A stretch of 64,000 nt of DNA, taken from NCBI RefSeq assembly GCF_000143415.4, contig NW_003314323.1, positions 934,499 through 998,498 on the forward strand. The letters run 5' to 3'. Every line of letters begins with the position of its first letter. Within the stretch, counting starts at the first letter, position 1. The stretch is from Selaginella moellendorffii (taxonomy: Eukaryota; Plantae; Lycopodiophyta). Position numbers and translations under genes: made by a program. A model generated the notes under the pieces. It was not told where the DNA came from, ran no database searches, and saw nothing but the letters and a program-made list of their open reading frames with translations. Shown here in pieces: positions 17,476-64,000 of this stretch.

Positions 17476-17719
17476 ATTTAACTTTGAGATGATCTTGGGA
17501 GCTAAAGGTGTTTACAATGCAATAATATATGTTATTAAGCATGGGTATGATTCTAGGGATATTCCTAAATATACTTAATGTGTTTAGGGCGTATTCATTA
17601 TTGCTGGCAATAAATCACCAATGATTACTTTGCCAACTTGAACTCAAGCAATGATCTAGTGTCCATATGACTACACCTTTACCTCCCCACACTCAACTTT
17701 CACACACACCCTCCCAGGA

Positions 17720-32600: not shown

Positions 32601-34253
32601 TGGAAGCAGAGGTAGAAGTAGAGGGACGAAGAGGTACGGAAGTGAGAGGAATGGATGAAACATAAGGAAGTATGAGACAAGGGGGAGAAGCCTCAAAGTC
32701 ACACTTGGCATGATTGCGCTGCAACCAATCCATACCAAGAATGAGGTCAAAAGCTTGACTCGGCACCACCCGCAACGACTACAACTCAAGCTCGAGATCA
32801 CCAACACAACCAGGTTCGCCTCATCTCGTGCACATGCATGTGTACAGCCGTTGCCATAAAGAATGAAAACTGGATCCGCCGCACGATGCAAGTGTAGACG
32901 ACAACGTGTGGCAACAGGTCGAGCAATAGAAGATAAACTCGAACCTATATCAACCAACACGGAGAAAAGAATAGGAGACTTCTTGTTATAAAAACGAGCT
33001 TGGAAAGTAAACACTGGATGAACCGGTGCTGAGTGAACCCCTTGATGATACTCCCGAAAGAAAGATGGAGGGGTCACTAATTTATTCGCGCAAGGTCCCT
33101 CCATTACTCGCGCGACTCCTCGTTTCCCGAATGCACCTCGGTATCCAAACCTTCCACCGCAGCAGCACCAACGGGACGTTGCTGACGCCAAGGTTTCCAC
33201 CCAGGAAATGGAGGTCGCCAATCCGGAAAGCGCCGACAACACCGATAAGTATGACCAACTTCATCACACGCCCAGCAACGAACATCACGGCCACAACCAC
33301 GTCCTCGCCCTTGTCCTTGGACTCGAGTAGCAGCAGCATCAACCTCCATGGGAACAGGACCATCACTCATAGGAAGTGGAGCTGAAGGACGTGTAGCAAG
33401 AAGTGGAAGAGGCAACGTCTCATAATGTTGTGCCAAGCGAAGAGCATCGTCAAGAGTGGCAGGAGCAAGACAAGATCTTGACGAAGTGCTAGCCACAACA
33501 TTCCTAGCTTGATCCGCTCTGACATATTTGGCTCCGCACTAAGCAAAAGACTTCGGAAACGAATGCCAAATTGCATCACCGACTCAAATGGCCCTTAGTG
33601 AAGACGATGTAATTGTTGGAAGGCATCATCACAATTGTCGGCGTGTCCGAAGGCGCGTTTGAAGACGTCCGGAAGAACACTCCGATCGCCATGAGTGGCT
33701 GTGCTCAATCCATTGTACCACTGCAATGCCGTGCCTTGGAGACATGTGGGGAACTCACACAAACGTCGAGCATCATCCCAAGAATGATATGTGGCAATCA
33801 CCCTGAAGTGATCGAACCAATGGTACACATCATCCCCAGGATTCCCGTGAAAGAACTCCGGCTGAACGCAAGGATTGGCACCAAGAGCAGGAGGAGTTGT
33901 ACCATGTGCCGTGAACGCTGCCATCAACTGAGTTTGGTTGTTCAATTGCAAGCGCATAGCATCAAGCAATTGAACCAACTGCTGCTCTAGAGTCAAAGGA
34001 GGAGATTGTGGATCGGCCATGAAGATGAATGAAAAAGAAAGAGCAAAAGAAGAGAAATGACAAAAAGTTGGAAAGAAATGGTAGATCTAGACAATGCAAA
34101 AAGCTAGATCTAAACCAAAATCCTGAAAGGAAAGAACAAAAGAAAGGAAATGGAAAAAGTTAGATCTAGACAATGCAAAAGTTAGATCTAAACCGAAATC
34201 CCAAATCCAAGCACTCCCCAGGGACAATTAAAAGTGCCCTTCAACTCCACCAA

Positions 34254-43500: not shown

Positions 43501-44560
43501 CTCCAGTTCCTCAACTCTTGCAAGTCCCCCCTCTTTGGGATAAGTGCAATTAAGCCCTTAAGAATCTCACAAGGCAAGGCCCCATCACGCTGAGCATCCC
43601 ACCACACTTGCAGCAGTAGTGAGCCTATAGTTTCTAGTGCTCCTAAAAAAAGCAAGCAAAAGGCCATCAGTACTTGGCTACTTGTCATTACTGAGCTTCC
43701 CAAGTGCTTCCTAAAGCTCCTCCAATGTGAAGTCCTTCCTCAATGAGTTGTACCACTTGTGAGGGACATGCCGGGGAAGAGATGCAAGCACTTCCTCTGC
43801 TGCACTTTCCCTTCCTAGAGTCCATTGCTGGGCCGTGTATAGCACTTGGTAGATCTCCTGGGTGAGCTATTGCATCCCTTATTGATCCTTGATGACCCTC
43901 CCATCTCTGTGCTTCAGTCTCAGGATGGGAGGAGAATTAGTAACTGGCCTAATTCCCCGAAGCTTCTGGGAAAAAATTGGGAGCATTGGGATCATTCCTA
44001 GTTTGTCCTGCATGAGGGTGTCTTGTATTAGCTTGATCACCACCGAGTCTTGCAATGTTACTCTCATGATTGACTGTTGGACTACTGTCCCTCTACCTCT
44101 TTGGAGCCTGATCATGCAACGAAGAGGGTTGTGGTTTGAGAAGGAGGTGAAGCCAAGCCATGTTTTAAGGCTCCTGCCATCTTGCCATATGCAGGTTGAG
44201 GCATACACCCGGTCCATTCTGAACTAGGAGGTCACTGTCTGTCACCTTGTAAAAGGGTGAGCATGTGGTGCGAACCCCTCTACATGTTGGAGGTCCATGA
44301 TCCCTAATACATCCATGCAAGAAAATGAGGTGTTATGGGTCTCCCCTGCCATTTTGTGGAGATGGTCCACACCGCAGTCATCTTCCCTCTATACTTTGTC
44401 CACAAGAAGCCTCGGATAGGGTATTTCACAAAGCCTATCCACTCAGTAATGGCACTCTCTATGCATGTCTGGTAGTCACCAATGGTGATGACCTTCAGGA
44501 AGGCTTTATCTCCAACTTTTAGTTCTAATAATTGTTTTTCAAGTTTGCCCTCTATCCCCA
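40570..44560 (-). mobile_element. Degenerate L1-like LINE (endonuclease, RT, C-terminal region), interrupted at about 42535-43040
   Basis: EN relics IGDY, MDRVY, SNHNPL. RT motifs GLIALIPKRGD..NWRLITMLNTSYKVYAK, FVPGRQIAENI, LDFENAYNCVDW, QGSPLVPYLF, AFVDNT (for ADD). (AT)n at about 40557 near the 3' end. Confidence 0.88.
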
Positions 44561-45966: not shown

Positions 45967-47106
45967 TGTCGCGAATGTGACTTCGGGTATCGAAAGTTAC
46001 ATGTTGGCTAGTCCTTACGGACACTCTTACCTTACTGCCACGATAGTAGGAGGTCGGTGTTGCTAGACCCTTTATCAGTCTCTCTTGTTCAAGTGTTAGT
46101 AAACTGAACTTTACATCTGTACTTAGCCGGATGAGCATAAGGACGGAATTCCTAAGTGTCTATTTTGCCAAGTATACTTGGCCCAGCTTTTTAGTTCTCT
46201 TTTGCTCTGGCTTGATAAGAACCCTCGCATATTGAGATTGGTTCCTTAATATTGCTGGATGATAGCTTACCGTGTTTGCCAAATATCCTCACTATTATAC
46301 CCTTTGTGTTAGTCTCATTTTGGTCCCAAATACTATTTATGGAAAGTGTTTAGATTTGCTCATTTGGCATATCTATAGAATGTAGAGATTGACCTGAACA
46401 CAATGGTGTTTATCCCGTGTCCAAATTTGCAATCTAGGGACATTCCATATTTAGTAAGTTTCGAGTTTGTTTCAGAGACTAACTCTTGATACTAAAGGAG
46501 GCTTGGGGTGAAAGCCCAAAGCGTGTGTTCCTCAAGGGGGGGGGGGCGGCTTGTGGGGGGTCCCAAATGTATAATAGGGATAGTGGGTAGGTCAGGCATG
46601 GCTAACCAACTTGAGACATAGTTTAGCTCCCATTTGTGTGCTTGTCCTTGTTTTGCGTCTGATTTGGGTCTAAGCCCAAGTTCCACACCATGTTAGCTGG
46701 TGGAGTACCCATGTCCTCACGTTAGGCCACCGGTATGCCAAAATAGCGCCAGACTCCATTTGGCTCCGTTTTGTGTGCTGGTCCTAGCATTGGGATGCTG
46801 GTTACTCTAAAACTGTTCCAAGTTGCTCTAGGCTCCTGTCCCTTCGCTCCTTGGGCTTTATGCTCGGGAGTTGCTTTGTGGTTTGGTTCCATCACTCCTT
46901 GGCTCCATGCTTGGGAGTTTAGCACCATTCCTTTGTTTAGTGGCCCAAGGCCCTGAACCTCGGGTTTCACACCACTATCCTTTGGACACGTGGCATATGA
47001 CATGTGGCAAGTGTCACGTGGCATAAAGAGGGTTTAGGTTTTGCTTTGTGGTGTTATCCTATGGTAAATCACCATAGGATAAAGGGTCAAAACCACGTGT
47101 GCTACA
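45967..47106 (+). repeat. 5' LTR
   Basis: TGTCGCGAATGTG...CACGTGTGCTACA imperfect terminal inverted repeat; about 14 differences (all transitions) from the 3' LTR in the first ~200 bp. Confidence 0.9.
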
Positions 47107-50100
47107 TTTGATATAAGAGAATGAGTTTAGCGAGTACTATATAATGAGATTGGGTAACTAGTCTCGTTGCATACGCAGAGATGAAAACGATGATCCAAGT
47201 GAGTACACGTTTGGGTGCAAAGGCTTCGCATTCATTCCTTGGGTATGGATTTTGGTTACCTTTTGTACCTATTATGTGAGCTTGCTCTTGGGCTCATAAG
47301 AGGGATTAAATTGTTCCATTTTAGCACGAGTTTACGCTTGGGCTCGTGAGTGAGGCACATTAGCAACTCAAAGTTACACTTTGGGTTGGCAGGATTAATG
47401 TTAGCCTATCGGTGGTTCCATAAGTTGTTCCATGTACCGTGGGTGAAAGTAAACCTTCCCTAAGTTTGTTATGAGTGGCAAATAGGCTAATCCGTAGCTG
47501 TTTAGCATGGCATTAGTAGATCCTTCCTAGGCATGATTACAAGTGGATCAACTAAGACTGTAGGGATTAGTCTATTGGTTCAAGTAATCATTGTCATGTT
47601 CTCTCATAAACTTTTCTTGGATTGGACTGAAAGCAGTGCAAACACAAGTTTGAAGTTTGGTCAAATATGAGACCAGAAAAAGAGTTGTCGGGGACAAAGG
47701 ATCAAACACATAAATCATCTTCTCTTCTTGAAGAGATGATTTGCAACGAAATGTTAACTCATTGCTCGTGTTCACATTATGCAATCAAAAGTCCCTACCT
47801 TAATGCATGTTGGAAATGATAATCTTGTAAATGGTGAGTCATGGGATGGATAACGGTGAAGCGCTAAACCATTTTGTCTAGGCTTGCTATTGGAAGATTT
47901 AGGTTGCAATGCTTAATTCTTTTTTGGGGAATTTTACTATTGCTCCTTGAGTAGCTTGGTGTTGAATTGGTTTTGAGTTTGGTCGGAAAGAGAGTGGCAT
48001 GAGCTTGTCCGTGTTGTGAACAAAAGTTAGTGGTGTTGAGTGTTGTAAATCTCTATCGGTGGGGTGTGGCATTTATATTGCATTTTGTCGAAACGAGTTG
48101 ACACTTGATACTCACATAAACCTTTGTAATAATGACATGGGCATTGCTCGTGGTGTTGCTTAATTGATGATCGAGTCATTGTGATTTTATATCATATCCA
48201 TGTGATAATGAGCAATGTGTTTACAAAGTTGCTTGGTTAAACGATGATCAACCCCAAAGTGGTTGATGGTGAAGCTAGTCTATTTGCACGAAGTAGTATT
48301 GTAGTAGCTTTGATTGGATTCTCAATGATGGTCCATTATGCTAAGTTTATGTTAGTTCCTTGTTCCTTGAAGGGTTTGCCCATAAGGTGTTGGAAAAAGG
48401 TTATAGCAATCGTTTGCTTTAACTCGTCAGTTGTTCCGTTAGCACTTGGAGTAAGTTATTGAATGGAAAAGGTGTGCAGTTGAGGCATTGACATCACTAG
48501 CATTTATGTTAGTGGAAGTGGCATTGTTATTTTGAGTGATAAGGATTTTCTTTAGAGCTTGATTTTCTATGTCATTTTTCTTGTTAGTGTTTGGGCTTCA
48601 CATTGGATCTTGAAGGTGGTTGAAAAAGAGTGTTAGTGCAATGTGAATATCTGAAGATGTGGTCTTCGTGATCAAGCATTGGATGTTCATTTTGCATTTT
48701 ACAGATGTCGGTATTGGATATCGGAAGTATGGGCAAAAAGATGTTCGATGTTTAAGCATACTGTGGGTCATGAGAATTGGTGTTGGAGTGAACTTATGTG
48801 AAGTTGTAGGTAGGAGGAAGTTGGTTGAGTTTTGAAAGTTTGCATTCTTGGATTGAGAGTCATTTTTTCTTTAGGATGGAAAATTTTCCACAAATTTTTT
48901 TAGGTTTTTCCAATGGCTGATTTGTTGATCACTTTGTCTGAAAACCATTCTGTTTTCGAAAGCCAATACAAACTAGTGAAGGGGTTAGAGTTGACTTCGG
49001 TTAACTTAGACCTTAGTAAGTAGTTTGTATGATACGACCCAAAAGGGATGTTGACTTTTGAAGCTAAGGCAATTAAGTTAGATAGAGTCTAGAGTTGGTG
49101 TAGAAAAGTGGCCGTTGCACTTTTCTAAGAAGGGTGCCTTTCTTTTATAGTATTATGCTTGGTGGCATGTTGTACTTTGCATTTCGTTAAACTCTATGAG
49201 ATTAGTGAGCTCTTACTAATCTTGACTTGGTCTTGGTGGGCCTGCGCCTTGACTGAGGATGGTGATGTCCAACTTAGTTGTTTGAGTTTGAGATGTTAGT
49301 ACCCATACTATAGTTTTGTCTATGAGGAGGTTGTGTACCGATATGAGTCCATCTTATGGTCTTCACTTAAGTTTCGACTGAGTGTTGATCATGCATAGCT
49401 AGCCTCTTCAAAAAGGCATGCTCAGAGCTGTTGACTAAACGCATTAGTGAGTTTATCGTGGTTGAGTTGGATTTGAGTGGTCATTTAGTTTGTGCTTGTC
49501 CATGAACCTTTATCTCGTACCTAGGGTATTACATTCATGTTGGACAAGTTTATGACTCAATGCGTGAGTTTAGTGTTTGGGTCTCGTGAAGGTAAATTGA
49601 AAGAGTGATTGTTAGTTGCTTTGCAATTAGTGATTACTTGTAGACTTTGTCAAGAACTTTTGACACTTGCTTCACTCGATGAAGATTTAGCAGTGATGGG
49701 CTTGTTTTACCGGAATTGTGTTGCGGAGGATCGTGTCATTAGACTTATATGGTTTTCCATGTTGGTATGTTGACTCTACCTTTGTCGATATCATTTTGTT
49801 GCATTTAGTTCGTAGTGTTGGATTTCATTGAGTCTTGGACGTGGTGAATCACTCCTTGATGAAGTGTTATCTATAACTGAGTTTTGCTAAAGAATTAGTC
49901 TTTGATATTGACTAAAGTATCTTTGACTTTGGTTAGCTTGGTTGCTAGAGAGCTTTGAGTGGTGATTTACTTTTGCTTTCTTCTAACTTTGCTTTAGTGT
50001 TGATGGCATAGAAGTGATGCTTTGTTGTTAGCAATATTGATGTTGAGATTTAAGTGAGATGAGATGTCTATCCTTAGGATTGATATTGAGTTTCATTACT

Positions 50101-52081
50101 CTCGATAGTGTTGATGATTTGGTTGTCACTTTGTGTTATTAGCATTCGCACATTTGCTAGTTAGCAACTATGTTGACGTTCAAACGAACTGAGTGGCAAA
50201 TTGAGTTAGTTGTGTTTTACAAGATTGTTTAGTAGAGGTTGAGTTTTGGCTTTTCCTTGAAAAGTGATTTAGTTGTGAATCATACTAGCTTTACGAGAGG
50301 AAGAGTTAGTGATCGATATTGAAATGATTGAATCCTTATTAGATTTGAGTTGAAATATATTAATCATTGATGATTCTTCTTGTGCTTATTATGAAGTGAG
50401 TTACGTCTTGCTATAGATGGATTTATGGAGGATCGTTTCGTGATCACTTGTTGAGCATAGCTCCATTGTGCTTGGCTTTTGGATTGATACAGATATGCTC
50501 TTCATTAGCTTTGCATTATGAAGTTTAACTTATGGATGTGTTAAGGAAAATATCGTGGGTTGTACCATGATTTCTTCTTTAGCACTGAAATTAGTTCATG
50601 CAAGATTTGTGATCATTGTTAGACAAAACTTGGCTATAGGCTTTTTCGAGTTTTTGGTTCTTTGAGTTTTCATGCTCATTGTCCCATTTGTTAGAAGTTG
50701 TTGGGGAAGGTATTTTGGCTCATTAGTTTCAATGTTGAAGTTGGCTTTTGCATCTAGCAATCATTGGTGATGATTGATTATCATCTAAGATAGTTGATTA
50801 TCCTTATCAAAAGGTTTTTGCTTAATTATTGTTGATATAGAATGATTTGTCATTCTTTGGGATGGTGGATTTTTTATTCAATGATGATTATGCATCACTG
50901 CATTGATGGGATGATCGATAATCTTTCATGATAGTTAGTTGTTCTTTTTGATGGTTTATGACTTTTCGCAATACCATATGTTTTTTGTGGTTTGCTCTGG
51001 ATTGGTCTCTTGGGTTTGCGACATCAGTAAGATGTTACTAACACTTGCTTAGGCAACTTGAGTTCCTTGGTGTTGTTGGTTGGGATCTATTCGGATTGGC
51101 TAGTGTGATAGTTAGCATGAATGAGTGTTTATTGGTCTTGCCACATTCATTCTGTTTTGTTGATTATTGCTCAAGTTAGTTTCAATAGATTAGAATGTTA
51201 TTTCTTTCAGGTGATACATTCGCGAGCATCTTGCTTGCCAGTCACTGATACTTTGTGTTCTTTGAGTTATCTTTCGTAAGTCGTTTGGCATTTTATCTGC
51301 AATCTTCAGTAGTTAAATTTTATCATTGAGTTTTTCTTGATGATACATTGGTTATTGAATTTTGTTGGATGGTGACTCCTATGTTTTTCCAAACATGATG
51401 ATCTTGGTGGTTCCTACACTATCATACTGGTTTATCGGATGATAACTTACTTGGAATACTTTTATGTTCTAATCTAAGATATATTCACTAATAATTAAGT
51501 CTCTAAGATATCATTGTCTATGACTTTGATATTGTCCATCTTTTAATCTTTGAGTTTGGGCCAGTATATGCAGCCTGGCTTTGGCACTTCGTGTGCATGT
51601 TGAAATCTCTAGTCATGGGGTAGCTACTGTCGACTGGTCACATAACCCGCCTCTTTGTCGATGTTCCTTATTCCGTTAAAAGGGCGTGATCGTGTAAATA
51701 ACTTTAACTACCTGTTTACAATAGTCTATCTAAACCTTACCGATAGGTTTGGTTTCTTTGCTTAGGAGGGTTGGGGCTTTTGGCTTCTCTCTCTATGTCC
51801 TTGTGGGTAGGGGCGTATCACACTTTTGTAAGCTGGGTGACTCCCAGAGCAACAAGGGTGGCTAACTTTGTTGGTCATTTCCTTGTCGGCGACAGCCGGA
51901 AGGTGTCTGAGCTAGTAGCGCATCCGCATTAGATAAAGAGGTTACCTCCTAACTCATTTAAGTTGGTGGATTTCTCACATAGTGTGAGCACCGTGAACTT
52001 TTTCTAGAGTTGTTTTCTTTGCGGTATTCTAGACTCGAGTATGCATCGACGAGGACGTCAATCTTCCCTAAGGGGGGCAAG

Positions 52082-53199: not shown

Positions 53200-54650
53200 C
53201 TTACCATCTTCATTTTAGCTCTTATTAAAAACCTCAAAGAGCAGTCCATGACTTAAATGAATATGGAGTGAATCCTAGGCTAACCTTCCAACCCTTAAGG
53301 CATAATGGCCTTAAATCCCAGAATATTCTTAAAACTTTTCTTGGGTTGTGTCTCCCCTCCCTCATGGATCAACCATGGACAGCAGTCTCAAAAAATTAAA
53401 TAAGCCTCATATGAAGGGAGTCTAAATCAATGGTCATGGAGAAAATATATGCAAACAACAACACTAACGTTGCGATAAATGACCATAAAAGAAAGAAAGA
53501 AATATGGCTTTCTCACATGACAATATGGTTACAGAAACAAGAGAATAAGAAAAGAATAAACAGCTCAAATTATATAACAATACTGCTATAGAACTCAATT
53601 CTCCCCTTCCTCATGAATGTTATCTAAGTCATAACCAAAAATCAAAAACATAAAAAATAATGTTATCTAAATCATAACCAACAATCAAAAATAAAAAAAT
53701 GTCATCCTCAATTTCCCATATAGCTTCATCCATAAAATAATTATTCCATTGAATTAACAACTCTTGAATTGTCTTACAGCATATTTTTACCAATCTTTGA
53801 GCAAGAATATTGGCTAAAATAACCTTCTTAGCATCAATCTCTAAGACTTAGATGATGAATTGATCCATGATATCACTAAAGTGCAAACATGTTTTAAGCT
53901 TGCTCACATAGAACATTGGATGAAACTTTAAACTAGCTGGTAAGTCCAAAGTGTAAGAAAGATCCCCCATGCACTATAAAATTATTTAAGGCCCACAATT
54001 CCATGGAGACAACTTAGCATTTCCTCCTCCTCTTAAAGATTGTTATGCATCTGATAACTTAAAGAAAACCTTATCACCAACTTTGTATGCTTGATAATGA
54101 CAATACTTATCAGCCAAACTCTTATTTCATTTTTGAGCTTGTCTCATATTTAACTTTGCCAACTAAAGTTAGTTTTGTATATCCTCTAGAAAATCACAAA
54201 CATGAGGCACTCAAACCAAAGCCAAACTTAAACTCACGAGAGATTTAGACTTATAACCATAGGCATGTTTAAATAACTATATTACAAAATAATACAAGCC
54301 ATTATTTTAAAAATCAATATAAAACACCATGACCTTAGCATAATTTAATAAGTAGATGATTGTTTGCCAGAACCCAAAACTTGTTAATAATCAAATCAAT
54401 CAGCAAAGAATTCTTCACCTTCTTGGTCATAGTGGCTAGGAAAAATAAAGATTAAGCAATTGTTCATGACGAGATCTAAATCATCATAAATATATCTAGT
54501 GATAATGACAATGACATCCACTTAATCTATATTGTGCATGGACCAAGTGAGGTCTTACTCACAAGCTAACTCAAGGTCACTTTGATTTCAACTGCATTGA
54601 AAAACACTCTTTGAAACAAGTATTGTTTTGCTATTAATAATTTTACATCT
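53200..54650 (-). mobile_element. AT-rich relic of a Ty3 integrase region
   Basis: Minus strand reads AYKVGDKVF (about 54065-54090), followed by KLSP..CGP (GPY/F module, about 53990-54015). Confidence 0.55.
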
Positions 54651-55293
54651 CAAAAGCTCTATTTCGTTAAAGTGGGAATTGTCATTATCCCACTTGTAAA
54701 ATAAGGTTTCCAAACCTTTATATAGTATATAAATATAACAAAATTCAACTGCATTGAGGCACATGCCATTTTATTTTAAACAAGGAAATGTCTACTCAAT
54801 CACTTCTCCTCCCCCTGCCACTGCTTCACCTCTCTCTTCTCCTTGTCATTGTCGTCCAATTTCTTTCTATCCTTTTAATATTGGCTCAGTTGCTCCGAGT
54901 CTAGGTGGAGCCCAAGTCCCCATTCAATCTTTACTTTCCCCTTATTAATAAAACAACTTCGTAGATTTCCAATAACATGCTGTAACACTTCTAGTATAAT
55001 GCAAATCCTCTCAAAGAATTGTCTTTTAATATTAATACAATGGCATGGAACCCCATGCCATAATAAGTTACATTTTTAAATAAATACATGCCATCTCAGA
55101 TTGTTATTTTTTGCCTCCAACGCCTATACAATAATCTTGGAATTTCATCACTCTCCACACTATCAGGATTTAAACCCAATAGTAATGCCATCTCTTCTCT
55201 AATACGTCCACGCTCATGTTCAGTGGTCGAAGAACCCATCCGGTTGAGCAGATTATGGAGATGCGGATAGTGCTTGGCTAGACAATATACATG

Positions 55294-55958
55294 CTATAAA
55301 TGATGACTGGTGTCTGTCCGATCAAATGGCTTCTGATATACCGTTCCATCTGCCATTTGGTTGATTTCTGCAGCCACCTCTTGGACTGGCCGGTTCTCTA
55401 TCACCATCGCTCCAAGCCGTTTTGCAAGGTCCCCCAGAACATACGGTTTCTTCTCCCTAGTTTCCATACTGCAAGAGATGGGGTGCACTGCATATGTGTG
55501 CGTGTTTGCTGCAGTTTTAATCGGCGAGTCATCGATGATGAGGATTTCACTTGACCTAGCAGTCCGGTTCATCACTACAGCCTCTGGCTTGATGAAGATG
55601 GGCTTGCTACCCCTCACATGGACCATAGTCAAGCAATCCTCCTGCGTTAGGAGAAAGTCAAATGGTAATATTACTCGCGTTTGATCGTGCATCATCTGTA
55701 GCAACATTAATGCATTGTGGCGCATCATGGATGTCCAAACTCCCAATTGCAAATTGAACCCGGCCCTCTGTTTTAAGTGTCGCATGGTCATTATTAGATC
55801 CCGCAGTTTCTCCCGTGTGATTAATGTGAATCTGTCTCTTTTGACCAACTTGCGACCGCAGGCTTTGGAGGGTGCAGTGACATTCGAGGACGAGCCACGC
55901 TCATGGGAGTAAAGGACACCGTTTAGATCAAAAACGATACAATACCTTCGCCGTGACT
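55294..55958 (-). CDS. FCP1/NIF-like HAD-superfamily phosphatase domain (probably a 3' exon of the large minus-strand gene)
   Basis: Motif I variant IVFDLNGVL, motif II LGVWTSMM, FDFLLTQEDC, KPIFIK, motif IV LIIDDSPIK. Preceded by a GT-AG intron (about 55959-56005) that joins in frame to ANIVD. Confidence 0.8.
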
Positions 55959-56924
55959 CTGAAATGAAATGCGTCAGCATAAAAAATGGTACAAGTCAAT
56001 TTTACCATCTACAATATTAGCGAATGGTGCTCCCGATGGTCGTTGAGAGGGTTTTGGTCGAGGAAACGAAGGGCGGAAATACTCTCCTCTGCAATGTGGG
56101 GTCAATCGCATCCGATGGCGTGTGGGCACATGCCATTTCAGCTGTAGACTCTGGTACAACTGGCTCAACAGTGGCATGGCGTGGTTCTGATGGCGTGTGA
56201 TCACACGCCATTTCAGCTGGTGCCTCCGTTGGCAAAGTGGACATGACCGAACAGGCAGCAGGGGCGGTGTAGGGAGGTTCCAACGGCGCGTAGTCAGACG
56301 ATTGGGCACACGTTGAGTCCGTTGGAAATGAGGATACGACCGGCTCGGCGGCTGGGGCGGCCTCATGCAGGTCCAATGGCGCCTGGTCACCGTCAGTTGG
56401 ATACGTGGACAAGATTGACTTAGTGGTATGGGCAGCATCAAGTGGAGCGTGGTTAGCTTGCTTGGCGTTGATATGGATAGTAGCCTCCACCAGCTCTGAT
56501 GACTCTTGCAGGCAAGTAGAGTCCACTGGCGGATCCATATGCATGTCCAAATATCTCCCTTCGATTGAGATGGTATCCTCCCTACTAGCTACTAAAAACA
56601 AACTCATTAGCACATTGAATCGACTATACTGTATTTACCATCAACTGCTATTGAGGAACTAGGACCGATATCACTTGGGCGCACTGCTGATTCTGAAGGA
56701 TTGGACATACGTTTCGACCCTTGCTTGGCACTATCCTTCCTCAACACTAAAGGCTAGAGTTTGTATCTTAATTCAACTGAATAATCTCTACTTACCATTT
56801 GCTCTGCGACCTACATGGACAATGTTAGAAATGGTAAAAGGTTAGGAATGGATGTACTATTATTTACCTGATGGTTTGTCTTGTATGACCTTCCTCCGCT
56901 GCTCTTTGGCCACCTCAGGCTGGC

Positions 56925-57100
56925 CATCGTCGTCATCATCGTCGTCGTCGTTATTGTGATCGTCACCATTGTGAGGACCATCCAAGTCCTCTTCATCCTC
57001 CTCTTCTTCGCCCTCCTCTTCTTTGTCCTCCTCTTCGTCCTTCTACTCTTCCTGCTCATTATCTTTCTCTGGCTCCTCATCCCCCTCCTGCATTTCTTCC
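56925..57100 (-). repeat. Acidic (GAG/GAC) low-complexity tract within the large minus-strand gene
   Basis: Reads EEMQEGDEEPEKDNEQEE*KDEEEDKEEEGEEEEDEEDLDGPHNGDDHNNDDDDDDD, with one premature TAG at 57043. Confidence 0.8.
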
Positions 57101-57754
57101 ATAGGCTGCTCAAGCTGGATGGCTTGTTCTTCCAGGACCATCTTGGGAAAATCATCTGGCCAAGTCTCCATCTCAAAATACAAGACATCCATAGCCTGTT
57201 TTAGTGCGTGACCTAGGACCGTATCCTCACCCGACTGTCTTAACATGGTTTCTGCACGTTCTTGCACCCTTTGAAGACAACAAGATGAGAAAAACGTGGC
57301 CCTGACTTGAAAAGCATCCCTCATCCATTGTACCTCTCCATTGAGATTGGGGAAGGGGAGTCCGCCATAGGAATCTGAGTCAGGAGGTGGTGACTGGCTG
57401 CTTTCGCACACACGCCATAACCGCGAGGCATTACCTATCATTTTTTCGTTGCCCTTCTTCCTTTTCGAATTAAACGCCTCTGATCCCGACGACTGTCCAA
57501 CGTGCTTTTGCTTTTTATGACCACTGTCAGTTTGAGCTTGGCTGGTGCTTGCCTGTTTTGCCTTTGAAGAAGTGTCTCCTGCAAGGAATGGCATGAGACC
57601 ACACGCCATTACAAATATAATTTGTACCTCCTTTTTTCCTATTGCTTGTCTGTTTGTCCTTCTTCACGCGCCACCAGTGCGCTTTTCAGTCCTCGTGTCT
57701 GAATATTCACAACGATCTATAATCAAAATGGCGTGAGGCCTCACATGACCTTAC

Positions 57755-60690
57755 CTTGTGCAGGTTGTGAGCTCGGCCCAACATGGGTATCTTCAACAGT
57801 AGCTGTTAACGCCATTTCAGCATCTGGGGGTGGCCACGCTCCTGCATACAGAGCTTGTGAGATAATATTTAAACTTAAAGTGCATACTCACCAGGTTCGC
57901 AAAGAAGATACTGTTTTTCTTTGGCAACTGTAATTATATGCTCCATTGAAGTCACCTCTTCAATGGAGTTTGTCACCGCAACACACGGGACACCCTTGAG
58001 TAGTGCGGCTCGAAAGAATAGTCCGCCGTAGTTGTACTCGACAATGCATTTGCCCTTGGAGTCGGAAGCAGGTGACCCACCCACTATTGCATTGAAGACC
58101 CAGCTGAGCATTTCCCATGCTACACTTGGAGCTTTCTCTGGATTCGAAAGCTCCATAGCCGTCTTCAGTTCCTCAGGCACGGGTAAATTGACCTCCCTCA
58201 GATCAATTCGATCGGCCTTGTCGAACGAAGCTGGGAAGTCACTCCAGTCCCACTCTGCTGCAGGACCAATAACAAGGGCGAGTGTGAAGATGCGGACATT
58301 CGTCGGTATCTTCTTCTTAGCCATTATCCCATGGATCTCCTGCATCTCCTTGCCTTTCAACCAAGCCTTCACCTCGTTCAAGGCCTTCCAGAACTTGTGA
58401 TAGGATTCGGAGTCGTAGATCATATAGTGGACTGAAGATTCCACCTCCGCAAGTCCCACCATTAAGTCAATGATGGAGCTGACTTCGTCTGCATGAGTGA
58501 TCTCCTCGTTTGTGAAGTCCATCACAGAAAAGATGTTCTTGACCTGCTCATCTCCGCGGGAAACGATGCTCCTCCACCTTTGATCCTCATCCAAATTCAC
58601 GTATACCCGGTAAGGTTCTCGATAGGCCTCTGCTGCGGGGTCGAGTTGTTTCTGAAGCCGGCAGTCGACATCCCTCTTAATGAAATTTGGATACTGATCC
58701 AACTTCTCAGCTTTACTTTTCGTGGCATCCCGCAGCAGATCGATGAACTTGGGGTCCCCCTTCATGTACTCGTCGATGTCTTCATTTGACAACTCCAGCT
58801 CTTCCATCATCTCTTGCGTGGTGTCGATGCTCACCCTCTCCACGGCCACTTGCTTGAAGATCCAATCCTTCAATAGCGCACGAGCTCTCAGAGTCGTGCA
58901 CAAGTCCTCGTATGTCACAATATGGCCGGGAGTCATTTTGGTCTTGTTGAAGACTACCTCACCACGTAGAAGAGCATTAGCCACTGTCAGAAGGTCGTCG
59001 TCGTCTAGAGACCGCGAGAAACGCAAGGCATTGAGCTTCAAATCATTGGGCTTCTGGCCGTCCTCCACACCCATTGAGTTTAGCAACTCCCCGTCATGGT
59101 ACCTCCTCAGCACATCTACCCATTTGTCAAAAACAACTTTTGTCGCGAGTAGAATGTTATGGATGCTGAGTGTGTCATTGACCCCCAGTGTTTTCAAGAG
59201 AAGACTCGAGAATTCCTGCAATGGAAATGGCGTGAGGCCACATGCTATGCCACATGCAACGAGGCTTACCTGCCAGGCGCTAGTTGCTAGTGCACGTCCT
59301 TGTCCTGGTTTTTGTGGCTTCTTCAGTTGAACCCAGGGCTTCCGTGTTCGTGCCAATGTCTCGTGCAGACCCAATTTGTAGCACGTTTCTTGCTTGACAT
59401 TCTGCGCGTGGGAGATGGATATGATAGATTGGAGGGGCGAGTTGCCTTTTATTAGGCGGACAACTCTTGTCTTGAAGACTTTCTTCACCTTCTCGCCCAC
59501 CATAATATCCACAACTATCTCTTGCATCGCCAAGCTAGAATGCTGCCCGGAGACGGCATAGAACTGGATGTTCTAATCGTCCAACACCTTCCTATTGATC
59601 AAGTCTAGAAACCTCGTCTCGCCCTTCATTGTTCTGTAGTAGGGGATCACGTCTTCGATGTCGGGTGTTACTGGACTTGCCAGCATCTTCTGCTTCAGTT
59701 TCTCCACCCACTCATCAGATACTAGCCTGTGGTTGTATTTGCTTTGGATGTCGATACGGCTCACGTCGATTGTATATACTTTGTTGGAATAGTAACAAGT
59801 ACTATTATCTGCGACGATTTTTGCTGCCTCTTCTTGCTCTTTCTGCTCTTTGCGGCTCTTCTTTTTGGTGGGTGTAGTGTTCAAACTCGAGGCAATGGCA
59901 TCACCGAGTAGCTTCTTTTTTGGACCAGGAGAGTCGGACGTCGGCTTGAGCTTGACCACCCTTTTCTGCTTCGGGGTAGTTTCCAGATCGACCCCCTTCC
60001 CCTTCGCTTCGCGAACTGGAGGCACTCTCAACGGCTCAATGTTGGAATATAGTTTTTGAACATCGCTGTAGGTGAGGTCCGTGGATTCCATGTGATCTTC
60101 ATAGACCCGCAGCGTCTTTGAAATTGTGGGCCTCTTGGACAACCTCTCCCTAGCTCCCTCTAGGAATTCCTCATAGCCGCTGCCCCCCTCCGGGAAACTG
60201 CTAGGATGTGCAAGGTGGATCTTGAAGGCGGACGCTGTCTCTACCACAAGTGCCAGTCCATATTCTTGCATGGAACTGCATGGAGTGTTTGTCACTTGGA
60301 TGAGGATCCCCATGCATTCTTTTCTCCCACCATCTGTGTTGTACAGCCTCAGATCCTCGCCTTCCATCCCGAAAGTCCAACTGATGAGCTCCTCCCCCTT
60401 CTCTGCATCCACATTGACAGTGGCTGGAAGAAGAACGCAATTCCTCGCCTGTTCAGAAATGCACAACAATTAGAGCTGACAGATGAAAAACTAGCAGCTG
60501 GAAATAACGTGAAGCCACACGCCATTCACCACTGCATCAGATGTCTTGAGGCTGCATCCTAAGATGGCGTGAGGCTACACGCCATCTGTAACCGGACTGC
60601 ACTCGAGAGCCCAATCGGTGCATGCCAATGTTGCTACTAAATAGCATGTGGCCTCATGCCATTTTCTACTTGGCCTAAAAGACTTACCAT
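57755..60690 (-). pseudogene. Large multi-exon gene: ParB/Srx-like domain plus possible degenerate amino-methyltransferase region; exons 60690-60688 (ATG), 60448-59270, 59215-57892, 57841-57755, continuing towards about 55.1 kb
   Basis: ATG|GTAAGT donor; in-phase GT-AG introns of 239, 54 and 50 nt. YNHRLVSDEWVEKLKQKM...FYAVSGQHSSLA (ParB/Srx-like). NPEKAP...GKCIVEYNYGGLFFRAALLKGVPCVAV (MTase motif X/I-like). One premature TAG at 59573-59575. Confidence 0.65.
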
Positions 60691-61364
60691 TTGAAGCCGA
60701 ATGGAGGCGTGACAATCGAGGCCGGACTCGCTGGCGAATGTGCACTGTGTGTGCAGCGGATCGTAGCAGCAAGGCTACTTTGCCACTTACAGTTGGAGAG
60801 TGGTGCTGAAATCTCCCGGGACGCCAAGTGGGCTGCGTGTGGGTGGCGGAGTGGGCGGCGGAGTTGGCGGCGAAGTTACAAACTGGGTGTGTCTTGAAGT
60901 GGACGCCGATGCACACGAGTGCGATGCGAGCGCGAGTGTGATGCAAGCGCGAGTGGATGCCGATGCACACGAGAAACCTGTAGAGAAGGTAGATGAGCGC
61001 GAATGTGAGCGTGATCGCGAGTGGGAGCGCGAGTGTGCGAGCGCGAGTACGAAGCAAAATGCAAAACCTAACCTCACACGCGCGAAATGTCACGACGGTT
61101 GGTAATCCCGCCACATCATCATTCCTCGGACTTGGGCGCCACCATTAATTTCTGGATTGCCGTGCGCATGCAAGCACGCAAAATCCAAAAGAAATCCGCA
61201 ACGTCATCATTCCTCGGACTGCATGCACGCGAAATCCAAAAGAAAGATCATGATTGGGATATCATTTAATACCCTCGCTATATTTATACCATGCATGATT
61301 GGATATTCCAAAGCATCTTGTATTTCCAAAAATGGCAGATGTTCAGCTAAATAAAGAAATTCTA

Positions 61365-62620
61365 TCTGTTTCTATTTTTCTCTCAAATCAATATTATAGC
61401 GTGTGGGCTCATGCAATTTTGAACCAAAGAAACCCAAAAAACGTTGGACCCAAAATATTTTGAAAAAACCCAAAAAACCCTAAACATTTTAAACCCAAAA
61501 ATCCAGGCGTCTTGTGCCATTATTCCTTGAATGGCATGTGGGTGCATGCCATTTTCAGGGCCAAATGCTGAATGGAGAAAAATTCCCTTTCAGTGCAAAT
61601 GCTGCAAGAGGCAGATGCCGAGCACAAAGGACTGTAACTACCTCACATGACACAGATAAACTTTTCTCTATTTGGCAAAGATAAACTTTATAGCGTGTGG
61701 GCTCATGCAATTTTGAACCCAAAAAATGCACCAAAAAATTCTTGGCGTCATCTGGTGTTATCTCTTGAATGGTGTGGGGCCGCATGCCATTTTCAGGGGC
61801 ACATAGGAGTATATTCCTAGGATATTCTGACACGCGCGAGATTTTTTTGAGTTTTCTGGAGATCCAACCGTTAGATCGTAACTAGATTTTACAGAATGGT
61901 ATACAATGCCCTTCTTGATGACCCTGCAGAGAAGCATCTCAATCGGACACCACATGAGACCACACGAGCCTTACAATGTTTCAGGGGCATTTGCCATAGA
62001 TCCGACCGTTATTTTGCTCCAAGATTCTACAGTTTGGTGTGCATTGACCTTTCCATTGACACTGCAAATGGACACCACAATCAGATGCGGGATCACAAGA
62101 AACCAACTTCACTAACTCTAGTTTCACCAAGATCTACGTAAGGAGTTATGAAATGAAAGGACCCTCTCTATTGAAATGTGTTTATGGTCCTAGGGGCATT
62201 GTGACATATCCTTTGATATCTGGGCAAATGTTGTAAGAGGCAGATACCGAGCAGATGTATCTCAGGCTAGCGAAGGGGACAAACGAAAGTTAGCTATAAA
62301 CATGACGGGATGCAAATAGATTACTAGGCTGGTCCTGCGAAAATCAAAAACCATAATTGAAAACATTGAAAATGCAAAAAGAAAGGTTTATAATATTTTA
62401 TAATTTTAAGCAACCAAAGGAATGTAAGTAGGGCATGTGTTTGTAAGTTTAAAAATGCCTCAACCACTTAAATTCCCAAGTAAATAAAGCTGTTTCTATT
62501 TTTGGTACAGGTAAACTTTATAGCGTGTGGGCTCATGCAATTTTGAACCCAAAAATGCACCAAAAAATGCTCGACTAGCATTATTCTTTGAATGGCGTGT
62601 GGCCTTATATTGCCATAAAT
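61365..62620 (+). repeat. Three direct copies of a 130-190-bp module, each carrying two palindromes, in the divergent promoter
   Basis: tatagcgtgtgggctcatgcaattttgaacc at about 61395, 61689 and 62519, each followed by ttgaatgg..tg.gg....tgccat. Confidence 0.88.
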
Positions 62621-62979
62621 GGACGTACACACACAGCATAATTATTCCTTTACACGGCGAATAATCTTGGTGCGGATCGCTGACATGGCATAGTAAAGTT
62701 CGAATCACTGACATGGCACAGCTGGATCGAGGCAAGGACATGATGTGACAAAGTTCAACCTCCGACAGCAAAGTCTAGAAGCTACTCAGTTTGAAATTTG
62801 TCAGAGGAATCATAAGATCTAGTTTGTCAGAGGATTTGATGTGACGTTCAAGCGTGTGTTATTTTTGAATTCTCGAACTCATTCCTAGGTCTATCATTTT
62901 TGTGCGCCGTGTTCTTAGTTCCGCTGAGCGCAGTGAGCGTTGCTTGTGTAAGCGGCATTGTGAGCTGTGGTTTATGCGT

Positions 62980-63118
62980 CTACGAGCGGTTGCGGCATTG
63001 CGAGCGCTATTGCGAGCGGCAGTTTATGCGAGTGGCAGTTTGTGCGAGCGGCGCTACGAGCAGTTGCGGTGTTGCGAGCGGCACTACGAGTAGTTGCGGT
63101 GTTGCGAGCGGCACTATC
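62980..63118 (+). repeat. GC-rich ~30-bp tandem repeat (tgcgagcggcactacgagcagttgcggtgt); related GCGAG-rich array at 60905-61050
   Basis: Visible tandem units in the putative first (untranslated) exons of both divergent genes. Confidence 0.8.
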
Positions 63119-63478
63119 TTTGGTGTGGCTACCGCTTCCTCTTGATATTCGGCATTTGTGCTTCCTGGTATGTTCACCATGGAATGGCTTAGGACCACAT
63201 TTAGAAATGGCATGAGGCCACATGCCATCTTGGGCCCTTGCAATTTCATGGCTAGCGTATTGTCATGTATGTTTTTACTTGCCTCCAGCTGTGTGTATAT
63301 CAAGATGGCATGAGGCCTCATGCCAATTTTGTGAATGCGAAATTTCACGTGGGTGTCAATAGCATGTTTGAATAATGGCATGTGGCCTCATGCTATTGAG
63401 GTTGTTTGGTATGTTATGATTTAGGCCATTCTCCAATCATTTTTTGTATGGTTTTAACTTCTTTTCTGCACTTTCAGA

Positions 63479-64000
63479 ATGGCCTTCAGGGTTGGGGAAA
63501 AGGTTTACATTTTGAATGGTGGGAAGAGAGTTGCAAAAGGGACCCTTGTGTCTATGGATCGGAACTTTGTTATACACTGTCAAAGGCTTGGGGAAGGCAA
63601 TGCTGCTGTATCAGTAGAGACTGTCTTCGATGGGAATGTGGTCGCTATTGAACGAGGAGAGATGGTCGTCGGGGTAAATGTTGTTGTTGCCTTGAAAAAT
63701 CTTCAGAAGAAAGCAAATGTTGGGGACAGCGCAAGTGCGACGCATGTTCCCTCCGTGGATCTTAAGAACCGTGCTACATGGATTCAGGCGAAGGTGTTTC
63801 TAAACAACCCCGAGGGGGAGGTGGTAGCTGAGGGCTTAGCCACAGTTGTCGATCCAAGAGATGCGGTTGCTAATCAAGAATTGGGCTGGGATGATATTGG
63901 AGTTGTGATTTTAGAGGTTGTTGACACAGAAGAAAACAGTCTGACTATTGGAAGCATTGTGCGGTGGAAATTGAGGCACTTAGTGTTTGAGAATGTGAAG
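63479..64000 (+). CDS. 5' part of a gene with two tandem Tnp1/En/Spm (Transposase_23)-like domains; runs off the window
   Basis: 174 open codons from ATG 63479 (absent from the ORF track because it has no stop). Reads VAKGTLVSMDRNFVIHCQRLGEGNAAVSVETV and EVVAEGLATVVDPRDAVANQELGWDDIGVVILEV..IGSIVRW. Putative 5'-UTR intron 63168-63477. Confidence 0.6.
   Translation, partial: MAFRVGEKVYILNGGKRVAKGTLVSMDRNFVIHCQRLGEGNAAVSVETVFDGNVVAIERGEMVVGVNVVVALKNLQKKANVGDSASATHVPSVDLKNRATWIQAKVFLNNPEGEVVAEGLATVVDPRDAVANQELGWDDIGVVILEVVDTEENSLTIGSIVRWKLRHLVFENVK

What the first reader, a model, noticed from the sequence alone, without database searches (positions are those of the whole stretch)
54750..64000. 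Candidate undescribed mobile element: ParB-like/MTase-like/phosphatase gene, divergent Tnp1-like gene, and a parS-like palindrome array
Seen: two divergent spliced genes share a ~2.8-kb upstream region. The block carries at least 18 copies of ATGGCRTG-N6-CAYGCCAT; I saw no full copy in the first 54 kb. The minus-strand product has a ParB/Srx-like motif set, an acidic tract and an FCP1-like HAD domain. The plus-strand product starts with two Tnp1/En/Spm-like domains. Known: bacterial ParB loads on palindromic parS sites, and En/Spm TnpA binds reiterated motifs in its own element. Inference: this is one large, self-marking DNA transposon or virus-like element whose proteins recognise the palindrome, for example for transpososome assembly or anti-silencing. 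This copy has premature stops, so intact relatives may exist elsewhere.
Basis: partly seen in the sequence, partly recalled or inferred. Interest (0 to 1): 0.92.

Follow-up and report, generated by a model that had tools for sequence, protein, structure and literature searches.

The report
Locus-restricted palindrome array, divergent gene pair
A 9-kb stretch of the spikemoss Selaginella moellendorffii holds two back-to-back genes, one of them broken, whose introns and shared upstream DNA carry about 18 copies of a 22-base palindrome seen nowhere else that I could look; this looks like a decayed transposon marked with its own binding sites, but mobility could not be tested.

Summary
The window is S. 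moellendorffii scaffold GL377627.1.

Confirmed:
- 17 matches to ATGGCRTG-N6-CAYGCCAT lie in 54748-63396. There is one weak match in the other 54 kb, and 0.7 are expected by chance.
- 15 of the 17 lie in introns, UTR or intergenic DNA, although 58% of the block is coding (P about 1e-4).
- Two divergent, spliced genes have start codons 2.8 kb apart.
- The minus-strand gene has an acidic tract and a Pfam NIF (FCP1-like) phosphatase domain. It carries two in-frame stops and one frame change.

Not confirmed:
- The ParB/Srx and methyltransferase readings got no support from Pfam, NCBIfam, PADLOC or PDB sequences. One structure model was partly usable and matched nothing; the other was unusable.
- The Tnp1 domain is one sub-threshold hit (E 0.0047).

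Transposon status is untested. The window holds no transposase, and I could identify no termini or second copy. These tools cannot search the plant genome or read beyond 64000. The closest Selaginella relative is an ordinary syntenic host gene without palindromes.

Best reading (confidence 0.4): a decayed CACTA-like element whose non-coding DNA carries binding sites for its own protein, as with TNPA or VANC targets. Interest is moderate.

The parts
54745..64000 (.). The block: the palindrome-bearing unit. Its right side is cut by the end of the window and its left edge is only approximate.
   Evidence: All but one of the 18 pattern matches fall in 54748-63396. The block has no DNA or translated similarity to the rest of the window. 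No terminus was identifiable at the left edge.
55096..60690 (-). Minus-strand spliced gene, broken: two in-frame stops plus one frame change (frameshift or unrecognised intron). If the splice model is right, it encodes about 1,600 aa: an N-terminal region, a conserved middle region, an acidic tract, a Pro/Thr/Ala-rich region and a NIF phosphatase domain.
   Evidence: Translations. GT..AG introns with frame continuity were read. Fusion of the phosphatase part to the upstream part rests on a 50-nt GT..AG intron only; no RNA evidence was available.
59270..60469 (-). Exon 2: an N-terminal region of unknown fold, a basic linker and the stretch read as 'ParB/Srx-like'.
   Evidence: Only the last ~65 residues are significantly similar to relatives (P0016, E 2e-7). 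The rest has no significant match. Collinearity with relatives in MAFFT is visual only.
57892..59215 (-). Exon 3: the conserved middle region, shared with S. moellendorffii P0001 and with metagenome and Logan proteins. This is the stretch read as 'MTase-like'.
   Evidence: Representative search: best hit P0001, E 8.8e-10. BLASTP E 5e-19. Alignment A1. AF2 mean pLDDT 53, with only the first ~190 aa (helical) confident; Foldseek found no PDB match at E below 0.4.
56920..57110 (-). Acidic (Asp/Glu-rich) tract.
   Evidence: Translations; tandem repeats of period 9-15.
55498..55944 (-). NIF / FCP1-SCP-like HAD phosphatase domain. The DxDx(T/V) motif is not canonical in this copy: the second acidic residue is absent.
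   Evidence: Pfam PF03031, E 1.6e-5, 25.1 bits, above the cut-off. phmmer found no PDB hit, so the domain is divergent. The motif was read from the translation.
60470..60687 (-). First intron of the minus-strand gene. It carries palindromes at 60504, 60564 and 60641 and a degenerate copy at 60538.
   Evidence: The intron was read: a start codon followed directly by a GT donor, and an AG acceptor before exon 2.
59216..59269 (-). 54-nt intron carrying the palindrome at 59227. Relatives share this intron position.
   Evidence: It is exactly the gap in the alignment to P0001. On L003 the reading frame changes at the same point between P0016 and P0009. The intron of the P0001 gene lies within 6 nt of this position and has no palindrome.
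57579..57753 (-). Inferred 175-nt intron carrying the palindrome at 57588 and a degenerate copy at 57725.
   Evidence: All three frames are closed inside it, and the frame is restored across it.
56115..56211 (.). Two palindromes (56115, 56190) inside a 75-nt tandem duplication in the Pro/Thr/Ala-rich region. These are the only two copies that overlap an open frame, and they may lie in an unrecognised intron.
   Evidence: (family D5).
54748..55061 (.). Palindrome at 55040 just past the end of the minus-strand gene, and a partial copy at 54748.
60691..63478 (.). DNA between the two start codons. It holds G+C-rich short tandem repeats in the presumed 5' exons of both genes (60827-61048 and 63011-63116). 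It also holds three copies of a 150-215-nt unit (61354-61570, 61648-61810, 62478-62625), each with two palindromes.
   Evidence: alignment A5, mean column identity 69%.
63169..63477 (+). Inferred first intron of the plus-strand gene, with palindromes at 63207, 63305 and 63375.
   Evidence: The GT donor and the AG acceptor just before the start codon were read.
63479..64000 (+). Start of the plus-strand gene, open for all 174 codons up to the window end. Its first ~55 residues are weakly Tnp1/En/Spm-like.
   Evidence: Pfam Transposase_23, E 0.0047, 17.2 bits, below the cut-off of 21. No homologues of 96-304 aa were found. The halves are not alignable by BLASTP.

Best explanation
The block is the left 9.3 kb or more of a decayed, lineage-specific genetic unit, most likely a relic of a DNA transposon of the CACTA/En-Spm kind.

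It has two divergently transcribed, intron-containing genes. Its non-coding DNA (the first introns of both genes, further introns, the 3' UTR and a triplicated intergenic unit) carries about 18 copies of a 22-bp quasi-palindrome with 8-bp arms, each holding a CpG, and a 6-bp spacer.

The palindromes most likely act at the DNA level as binding sites for a dimeric, sequence-specific protein encoded by the unit itself. The Tnp1-like plus-strand product is the better candidate. Binding would mark 'self' DNA for transposition-complex assembly, for transcriptional control or for protection from silencing. TNPA does this at CACTA subterminal repeats, and VANC does it at the non-coding regions of VANDAL21.

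The large minus-strand protein combines a region of unknown fold, an acidic tract and a CTD-phosphatase-like domain. I infer it to be an accessory factor directed at chromatin or transcription.

Shown: the motif array, its restriction to this locus and to non-coding DNA, the gene layout, the NIF domain and the breaks. Inferred: binding, which protein binds, mobility and the role of the large protein.
For: - The motif is confined to the block: 17 of 18 matches, against 0.7 expected. There are no matches in about 56 kb of other fetched loci, 47 kb of it Selaginella.
- 15 of 17 copies lie outside coding pieces, which make up 58% of the block (binomial P 1.1e-4).
- Six or more copies lie between the two genes, in a triplicated unit. 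This parallels VANC targets, which lie in introns, intergenic and terminal non-coding regions and often form tandem repeats (PMC5735166).
- CACTA elements carry reiterated direct and inverted motifs that form stem-loops and are bound by TNPA/TNP1-type proteins (PMC2613891).
- The plus-strand gene gives a weak Transposase_23 hit.
- There are signs of decay. The minus-strand gene has two stops and a frame change. The only variable arm position of the motif falls on its CpG (copies carry CG, CA or TG there). The coding pieces have CpG o/e of 0.62-0.77, against 0.84-1.05 for host ORFs in the same window.
- No protein from this locus is in the 1.8-billion-protein representative library, despite a 552-codon ORF.
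- Retroelement fragments lie close by.
- The shared intron in the host paralogue P0001 lacks the palindrome, so the motif is a feature of this locus and not of the gene family.
Against: - The window holds no transposase domain.
- No terminal inverted repeat or target-site duplication could be identified. CACTA pentamers near the left edge occur at about chance frequency.
- No second copy was seen, although the tools cannot search this genome.
- The Tnp1 hit is below Pfam's cut-off, and the second 'domain' is undetected.
- The motif is spread over at least 8.6 kb, whereas classical CACTA motifs are concentrated in subterminal regions.
- The closest Selaginella relative of the large gene is an ordinary gene, syntenic in both haplotypes. 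Relatives elsewhere share an intron position, which fits vertical descent of a host gene family.
Confidence: 0.4

Rival explanations
1. This is a host gene pair, with the large gene now a pseudogene. The shared promoter region and first introns carry many copies of a palindromic cis-regulatory site for a host transcription factor. No mobile element is involved.
For: The middle region of the large gene belongs to a small eukaryotic family with a shared intron position. That family includes a syntenic, intact Selaginella gene. No transposase, termini or extra copies were seen. The symmetric layout (a G+C-rich repeat exon followed by a first intron with three palindromes in both genes) fits a shared bidirectional control region.
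Against: About 18 copies spread over 8.6 kb, including downstream introns and the 3' UTR, is far more than ordinary promoters carry. The motif is absent from the paralogue's locus. The weak Tnp1 hit and the decay of the gene fit a transposon better.
Confidence: 0.22
2. The palindromes are neutral products of local duplication, or of repeated insertion of a tiny foldback sequence. They persist only where selection on coding sequence does not remove them, and they have no function.
For: Several copies clearly arose by duplication: the 75-nt tandem pair at 56111-56226 and the triplicated intergenic unit. Avoidance of coding sequence is also what purifying selection alone would give.
Against: Copies in separate introns share little beyond the palindrome and 3-4 flanking bases, so simple segmental duplication does not explain them. 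An inserting foldback family would also be expected elsewhere, yet it is absent from the other 54 kb of the window and from 47 kb of other Selaginella DNA.
Confidence: 0.15
3. The palindromes act in RNA. Hairpins in the introns and 5' leaders of both transcripts influence splicing or transcript fate.
For: At least 9 copies lie in inferred introns. In four minus-strand cases the hairpin sits 5-20 nt upstream of the 3' splice site (reading).
Against: Six or more copies lie between the two presumed transcription starts. Arm mismatches are not biased towards G-U on the transcribed strand: by my count, about 5 are compatible and 4 incompatible. No Rfam family matches.
Confidence: 0.1
4. The minus-strand protein is a ParB/Srx-type protein that loads on the palindromes as ParB loads on parS.
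For: Short motifs resembling the ParB/Srx core can be read by eye in the window protein and in its intact relatives. The target is a palindrome, as parS is.
Against: No ParB-superfamily model in Pfam, NCBIfam or PADLOC matches the window pieces or the intact relatives, even at E up to 10. The PDB profile search found nothing. hhalign of the relatives against the N-terminal piece gave probability 0.1. The AF2 model of the relative was too poor to test the fold (mean pLDDT 32.5). The family's host paralogue lacks both that region and the palindromes.
Confidence: 0.08

Closest known systems
CACTA (En/Spm, Tam1, Tgm) DNA transposons with TNPA/TNP1 proteins and reiterated subterminal motifs (PMC2613891)
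   Same: A repeated short motif, in both orientations and able to form stem-loops, lies within one unit that also encodes a Tnp1-like protein. The genes have several introns, and the motif contains a CpG.
   Different: No CACTA termini, 3-bp target duplication or tnp2-type transposase were seen in the window. The motif is a true 22-bp palindrome spread over at least 8.6 kb and through introns, not clustered near an end. The genes are divergent, whereas CACTA genes are co-linear and alternatively spliced. The Tnp1 hit is sub-threshold.
VANDAL21 / VANC21 sequence-specific anti-silencing system of Arabidopsis (PMC5735166)
   Same: Short motifs specific to the element are concentrated in its introns, intergenic and terminal non-coding DNA and are partly amplified as repeats. 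The element encodes accessory proteins besides a transposase.
   Different: The superfamily is different (Mutator-like) and the motif unrelated. No similarity to VANC was seen with the tools used. Here binding and any effect on methylation are purely inferred.
Bacterial ParB-parS partition and loading systems
   Same: A palindromic DNA site is present in multiple copies near the gene of the presumed binding protein.
   Different: No ParB-superfamily domain was detected by any library. No ParA partner is present. The context is eukaryotic and spliced. parS sites number one to a few, not about 18.
FCP1/SCP (NIF, PF03031) RNA polymerase II CTD phosphatase-like HAD domains
   Same: The C-terminal domain of the minus-strand gene matches the family model above its curated cut-off.
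   Different: The domain is very divergent, with no PDB hit by phmmer. Its DxDx(T/V) motif is non-canonical in this copy. It is apparently fused to a large unrelated N-terminal protein and an acidic tract.
S. moellendorffii uncharacterised protein EFJ30523.1 / D8RBM5 (P0001), with metagenome and Logan relatives P0009, P0004, P0016 and P0019
   Same: Homologous to the middle region of the minus-strand gene (E 5e-19 pairwise), with the same intron position.
   Different: P0001 is a 451-aa stand-alone protein in a gene-dense, syntenic locus. It has no N-terminal region, acidic tract, phosphatase or palindromes.

Membership tests
CACTA / En-Spm superfamily | Terminal inverted repeats beginning CACTA (about 13 bp) | tested here: inconclusive
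   Only the left side is in the window. CACTA pentamers in 53.0-55.2 kb occur at roughly chance frequency, and none is flanked by the repeated motif. The right end lies beyond the window.
CACTA / En-Spm superfamily | 3-bp target-site duplication | not testable with these tools
   This needs both ends, or an empty site in another haplotype or species. The plant genome cannot be searched here.
CACTA / En-Spm superfamily | tnp2 / TnpD-type transposase (Pfam Transposase_21) | tested here: not met
   Pfam scans of every piece of the block that was tested found no such domain. It could still lie to the right of 64000, which could not be read.
CACTA / En-Spm superfamily | TNP1/TNPA-type DNA-binding protein (Pfam Transposase_23) | tested here: inconclusive
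   One hit, E 0.0047, 17.2 bits against a cut-off of 21, covering residues 17-53 of the plus-strand product. The second repeat was not detected.
CACTA / En-Spm superfamily | Reiterated short motifs in subterminal regions | tested here: inconclusive
   A reiterated motif exists. It is spread through introns and intergenic DNA over 8.6 kb and not clustered at an identified end.
ParB/Srx superfamily | Match to a ParB-superfamily sequence model (ParBc, DUF262/GmrSD_N, DndB/DGQHR and others) | tested here: not met
   Pfam, NCBIfam and PADLOC found no hit at E up to 10 for the window pieces. For the intact relatives, NCBIfam and PADLOC were run on P0016, P0019 and P0020 at E up to 10, and Pfam on P0016 at E up to 1; none hit. 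The PDB profile search was empty.
ParB/Srx superfamily | ParB/Srx fold | tested here: inconclusive
   The AF2 model of intact relative P0016 with a 6-row alignment had mean pLDDT 32.5, which is unusable for a fold search.
N6/N4 DNA methyltransferases (the 'MTase-like' reading) | Match to an MTase model, or a Rossmann MTase fold with the catalytic (D/N/S)PP(Y/F) motif | tested here: not met
   No Pfam or NCBIfam hit. In the AF2 model the C-terminal half has pLDDT below 50, and Foldseek against PDB gave nothing at E below 0.4. No PP(Y/F) motif appears at the aligned position in A1 (by eye).
FCP1/SCP (NIF) HAD phosphatases | Match to PF03031 above the gathering score | tested here: met
   E 1.6e-5, 25.1 bits against a cut-off of 21.8, residues 13-161 on profile positions 1-126 of 160.
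FCP1/SCP (NIF) HAD phosphatases | Catalytic DxDx(T/V) motif | tested here: not met
   In this copy the second acidic residue of the motif is absent (translation). The copy is decayed, so this says little about intact relatives.
VANC-type self-specific anti-silencing system | Element-specific motif concentrated in the element's own non-coding DNA | tested here: met
   15 of 17 copies are non-coding against 58% coding sequence (P 1.1e-4). The motif is absent from the other sequence examined.
VANC-type self-specific anti-silencing system | An element-encoded protein binds the motif and lowers DNA methylation | not testable with these tools
   No binding or methylation data are available here.

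The most novel reading that the evidence does not exclude
A previously undescribed kind of large lycophyte DNA element marks its own introns and intergenic DNA with a CpG-containing palindrome. It also carries a fusion protein (a DNA-directed N-terminal region, an acidic tract and a Pol II CTD-phosphatase-like domain) that is recruited to those marks to keep the element transcribed or unsilenced. This would be a self-recognition system analogous to VANC but built from unrelated parts.
Probability: 0.1. Interest if true: 0.85.

Novelty: new variant of a known kind. Interest (0 to 1): 0.5.

Why it matters
If the block proves to be a mobile element, it would be a second, independent example of a transposon that scatters its own recognition motif through its introns and intergenic DNA, in an early-diverging vascular plant. 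So far this strategy is documented in detail mainly for VANDAL/VANC in Arabidopsis. The element would also carry an accessory protein with a CTD-phosphatase-like domain. That would make it possible to compare how elements distinguish self from host in lineages with different silencing machinery. It would also give a first context to a small uncharacterised eukaryotic protein family (the relatives of D8RBM5). If the block is instead a single-copy host pseudogene, the array is a local curiosity.

Tried and rejected
(1) Homologue searches exon by exon.
- The 552-codon piece found nothing within the allowed length range and only five weak hits in the full representative library.
- The 174-aa plus-strand piece found nothing.

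(2) Structure.
- The AF2 model of exon 3 was only partly usable, and Foldseek against PDB was uninformative.
- The AF2 model of P0016 was unusable, so no fold search was run on it.

(3) ParB-superfamily, MTase and defence-system models in Pfam, NCBIfam and PADLOC all gave nothing. The PDB sequence and profile searches also gave nothing.

(4) Extending the window or finding copies.
- Exact-protein look-ups of two ORFs of the block are not on record.
- The metagenome scan gave one 1.3-kb contig.
- IMG/VR gave none.
- Contigs of relatives (L003, L004, L007) are too short to show context and carry no palindromes.

(5) Self-comparison of the block with the rest of the window gave no similarity.

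(6) Rfam gave no match.

(7) Readings rejected.
- Endogenous giant-virus insert: rejected because the genes have host-type short GT-AG introns, one of them shared with relatives, and no viral relatives were found.
- Introner-type origin of the introns: rejected for intron 59216-59269, because its position predates the palindrome.

(8) Not done by rule. Each exon or ORF piece was searched separately by reference.

Full report
ORIGIN OF THE WINDOW. An exact-protein look-up of a germin-like ORF (7251-7904) places the window on Selaginella moellendorffii scaffold GL377627.1 (assembly GCA_000143415.2), at roughly 934.5-998.5 kb. The left part holds ordinary plant genes: a PPR-E gene, a U11-48K-like zinc-finger gene, a pectate lyase and three germin-like cupins. 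The middle holds reverse-transcriptase fragments.

THE PALINDROME ARRAY IS REAL. The pattern ATGGCRTG-N6-CAYGCCAT with up to 3 mismatches matches 18 times. Of these, 17 lie between 54748 and 63396 and one weak match lies at 45528. Shuffles give 0.70 on average and at most 3. The stricter core gives 8 matches against 0.00 expected. The repeat finder adds degenerate copies at 57725 and 60538, and an indel variant lies near 62590. The block has no DNA or translated similarity to the rest of the window.

The only variable position in each arm falls on a CpG: copies carry CG, CA or TG there. That is the kind of variation CpG deamination gives. The coding pieces of the block are modestly CpG-poor (o/e 0.62-0.77) compared with host ORFs in the same window (0.84-1.05).

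WHERE THE COPIES LIE.
- Reading the minus strand gives a multi-exon gene running from a start codon near 60690 to about 55096.
- Its first intron (60470-60687) holds three good copies and one degenerate copy.
- The 54-nt intron 59216-59269 holds one copy.
- An inferred 175-nt intron (57579-57753) holds two.
- One copy follows the end of the gene (55040), and a partial copy lies at 54748.
- The plus-strand gene starts at 63479, directly after an inferred 309-nt intron (63169-63477) that holds three copies.
- Between the genes, three copies of a 150-215-nt unit each carry two palindromes.
- Both genes appear to begin with an exon rich in G+C short tandem repeats, so the layout is roughly mirror-symmetric.
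- Only two copies (56115, 56190) overlap an open frame. They sit in a 75-nt tandem duplication within a low-complexity region, and they may lie in an intron I could not define.
- Overall, 15 of 17 copies are non-coding although coding pieces make up 58% of the block (binomial P 1.1e-4).

THE MINUS-STRAND GENE. It is broken, with two in-frame stop codons and one change of reading frame that is either a frameshift or an unrecognised intron. I give counts only, as required.

- Phosphatase domain. The C-terminal exon matches Pfam NIF (FCP1/SCP-like HAD phosphatase) above the curated cut-off (E 1.6e-5). The domain is divergent, with no PDB hit by phmmer, and its DxDx(T/V) motif is non-canonical in this copy.
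- Acidic tract. It is evident.
- Fusion. Joining of the phosphatase part to the upstream part depends on one 50-nt GT..AG intron. Relatives end where that intron begins, so two adjacent genes remain possible.
- Middle region (exon 3). This is the only part with clear relatives. The full-library search gave five weak hits. The best is S. moellendorffii EFJ30523.1/D8RBM5 (P0001; pairwise E 5e-19). The others are metagenome and Logan proteins (alignment A1).
- Confirmed intron. The alignment gap to P0001 coincides exactly with intron 59216-59269.
- Shared intron position. On metagenome contig L003 the family is split into two ORFs (P0016, then P0009) exactly at that position. The P0001 gene has an intron within 6 nt of it. 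The intron is therefore old and shared, but only the window's copy carries a palindrome.
- The paralogue. P0001 and its allele P0008 lie in gene-dense, syntenic loci on two scaffolds. They lack the N-terminal region, the acidic tract and the phosphatase. They look like an ordinary host gene.

THE PARB/SRX AND MTASE READINGS ARE NOT SUPPORTED.
- By eye, the window protein and intact relatives P0016, P0019 and P0020 show short motifs reminiscent of the ParB/Srx core. The end of exon 3 shows a strand and glycine-rich loop reminiscent of a Rossmann motif.
- Pfam, NCBIfam and PADLOC give no ParB-superfamily or methyltransferase hit at E up to 10 for the window pieces. For the intact relatives, NCBIfam and PADLOC (E up to 10) and Pfam on P0016 (E up to 1) also give none.
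- PDB sequence and profile searches are empty.
- hhalign of the relatives against the N-terminal window piece gives probability 0.1.
- The AF2 model of exon 3 is confident only for an N-terminal helical part, and Foldseek finds nothing.
- The AF2 model of P0016 is unusable, with mean pLDDT 32.5.
- These readings remain leads, not findings.

THE PLUS-STRAND GENE. The 174 codons before the window end are open. Residues 17-53 give a Transposase_23 (TNP1/En/Spm) hit at E 0.0047, below the cut-off. The second half looks similar by eye, but neither Pfam nor BLASTP detects it. No homologues of comparable length exist in the large protein collection.

IS IT A MOBILE ELEMENT? I could not test this.
- The window holds no transposase domain.
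- The left edge shows no recognisable terminus.
- The right side is cut off.
- None of the tools can search the Selaginella genome for further copies or read beyond 64000. Exact look-ups of block ORFs are not on record.
- Relatives are rare in metagenomes and absent from IMG/VR.

Evidence in favour of an element:
- the motif is restricted to this locus and to non-coding DNA;
- the motif is partly amplified by duplication;
- the plus-strand gene gives a weak Tnp1 signal;
- the gene is decayed and CpG-depleted;
- no gene product from this locus appears in the protein libraries;
- retroelement fragments lie nearby.

Evidence in favour of a host locus:
- the closest paralogue is host-like and syntenic;
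- the family shares an old intron position.

MECHANISM. A 22-bp site with two 8-bp inverted arms and a 6-bp spacer is what a dimeric sequence-specific DNA-binding protein would recognise (established general knowledge). Six or more copies lie between the two presumed transcription starts. Arm mismatches show no bias towards G-U on the sense strand (my count). This favours a DNA-level role over an RNA-level role.

There are two close analogues. CACTA subterminal motifs are bound by TNPA/TNP1-type proteins (PMC2613891). VANC21 targets lie in the introns, intergenic and terminal non-coding DNA of VANDAL21 and often form tandem repeats (PMC5735166).

My best reading (confidence 0.4) is a decayed CACTA-like element that carries binding sites for its own protein. 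The Tnp1-like product is the likelier binder, and the large acidic, phosphatase-bearing protein would be an accessory factor directed at chromatin or transcription. The rivals are a host gene pair with a dense cis-regulatory array (0.22), neutral local repeats (0.15), RNA hairpins (0.1) and the ParB-parS version (0.08).

RULES AND SLIPS. Exons were searched one by one by reference. The joined-exon step was left out, so no search or fold used a spliced product.

The ORF-piece coordinates used as references in tool calls, and repeated in my first notebook entry, necessarily abut breaks of the minus-strand gene. I did not label them as breaks and have not listed break positions in this report.

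VERDICT. The domain claims are only partly upheld. The transposon interpretation is plausible but untested. Interest is moderate (0.5); if mobility is confirmed, I would class it as a new variant of a known kind.

Noticed in passing
window 1-19124: Ordinary host genes fill this stretch: a PPR-E gene (30-1631), a U11-48K-like CHHC zinc-finger ORF (3150-4301), a pectate-lyase exon (5516-6334) and three germin-like cupin genes (7251-7904, 8238-8906, 18489-19124). The germin at 7251-7904 identified the scaffold.
   Followed up: partly
window 10001-18000: An 8-kb stretch of very low G+C (24-32%) lies between gene-rich DNA of about 50% G+C. Its nature was not examined.
   Followed up: no
window 31519-33242 (-) and 43344-43703 (-): Reverse-transcriptase (RVT_1) ORFs are present, so retroelement fragments lie between the host genes and the block.
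   Followed up: partly
window 46001-52000: Strand composition is strongly asymmetric here (GC skew up to +0.31, AT skew down to -0.27), with no long ORFs. This is unexplained.
   Followed up: no
window 54587-54600 and 54744-54757: An exact 14-nt direct repeat lies 157 nt apart at the left edge of the block, and the second copy overlaps the partial palindrome at 54748. It could be chance or could relate to the boundary.
   Followed up: no
window 60827-61048 and 63011-63116: G+C-rich short tandem repeats (periods 12-30) lie in the presumed 5' exons of both divergent genes, giving the locus a mirror-like layout.
   Followed up: partly
window 57588, 57725, 59227, 60504 (minus strand); 56115, 56190, 61531, 61769 (plus strand): Many palindromes are followed within 5-20 nt by a T-rich run and CAG, which looks like a 3' splice site. 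In one orientation the arm-spacer junction reads like a GT donor. In the minus-strand introns the palindrome sits just upstream of the acceptor. The significance is unknown.
   Followed up: partly
L002 10001-11425 and L005 10001-11425: The host paralogue P0001/P0008 (D8RBM5/D8RY03) is a 451-aa protein of unknown function. It is conserved at syntenic positions on two scaffolds (haplotypes), between an ArfGap gene and a VQ-motif gene.
   Followed up: partly
L003 3631-3721; L004 3318-3941: The metagenome contig with relatives P0016/P0009 ends in a 13-nt tandem repeat. The Logan contig with P0014 carries a SET-domain ORF downstream. The source organisms of these contigs are unknown.
   Followed up: no
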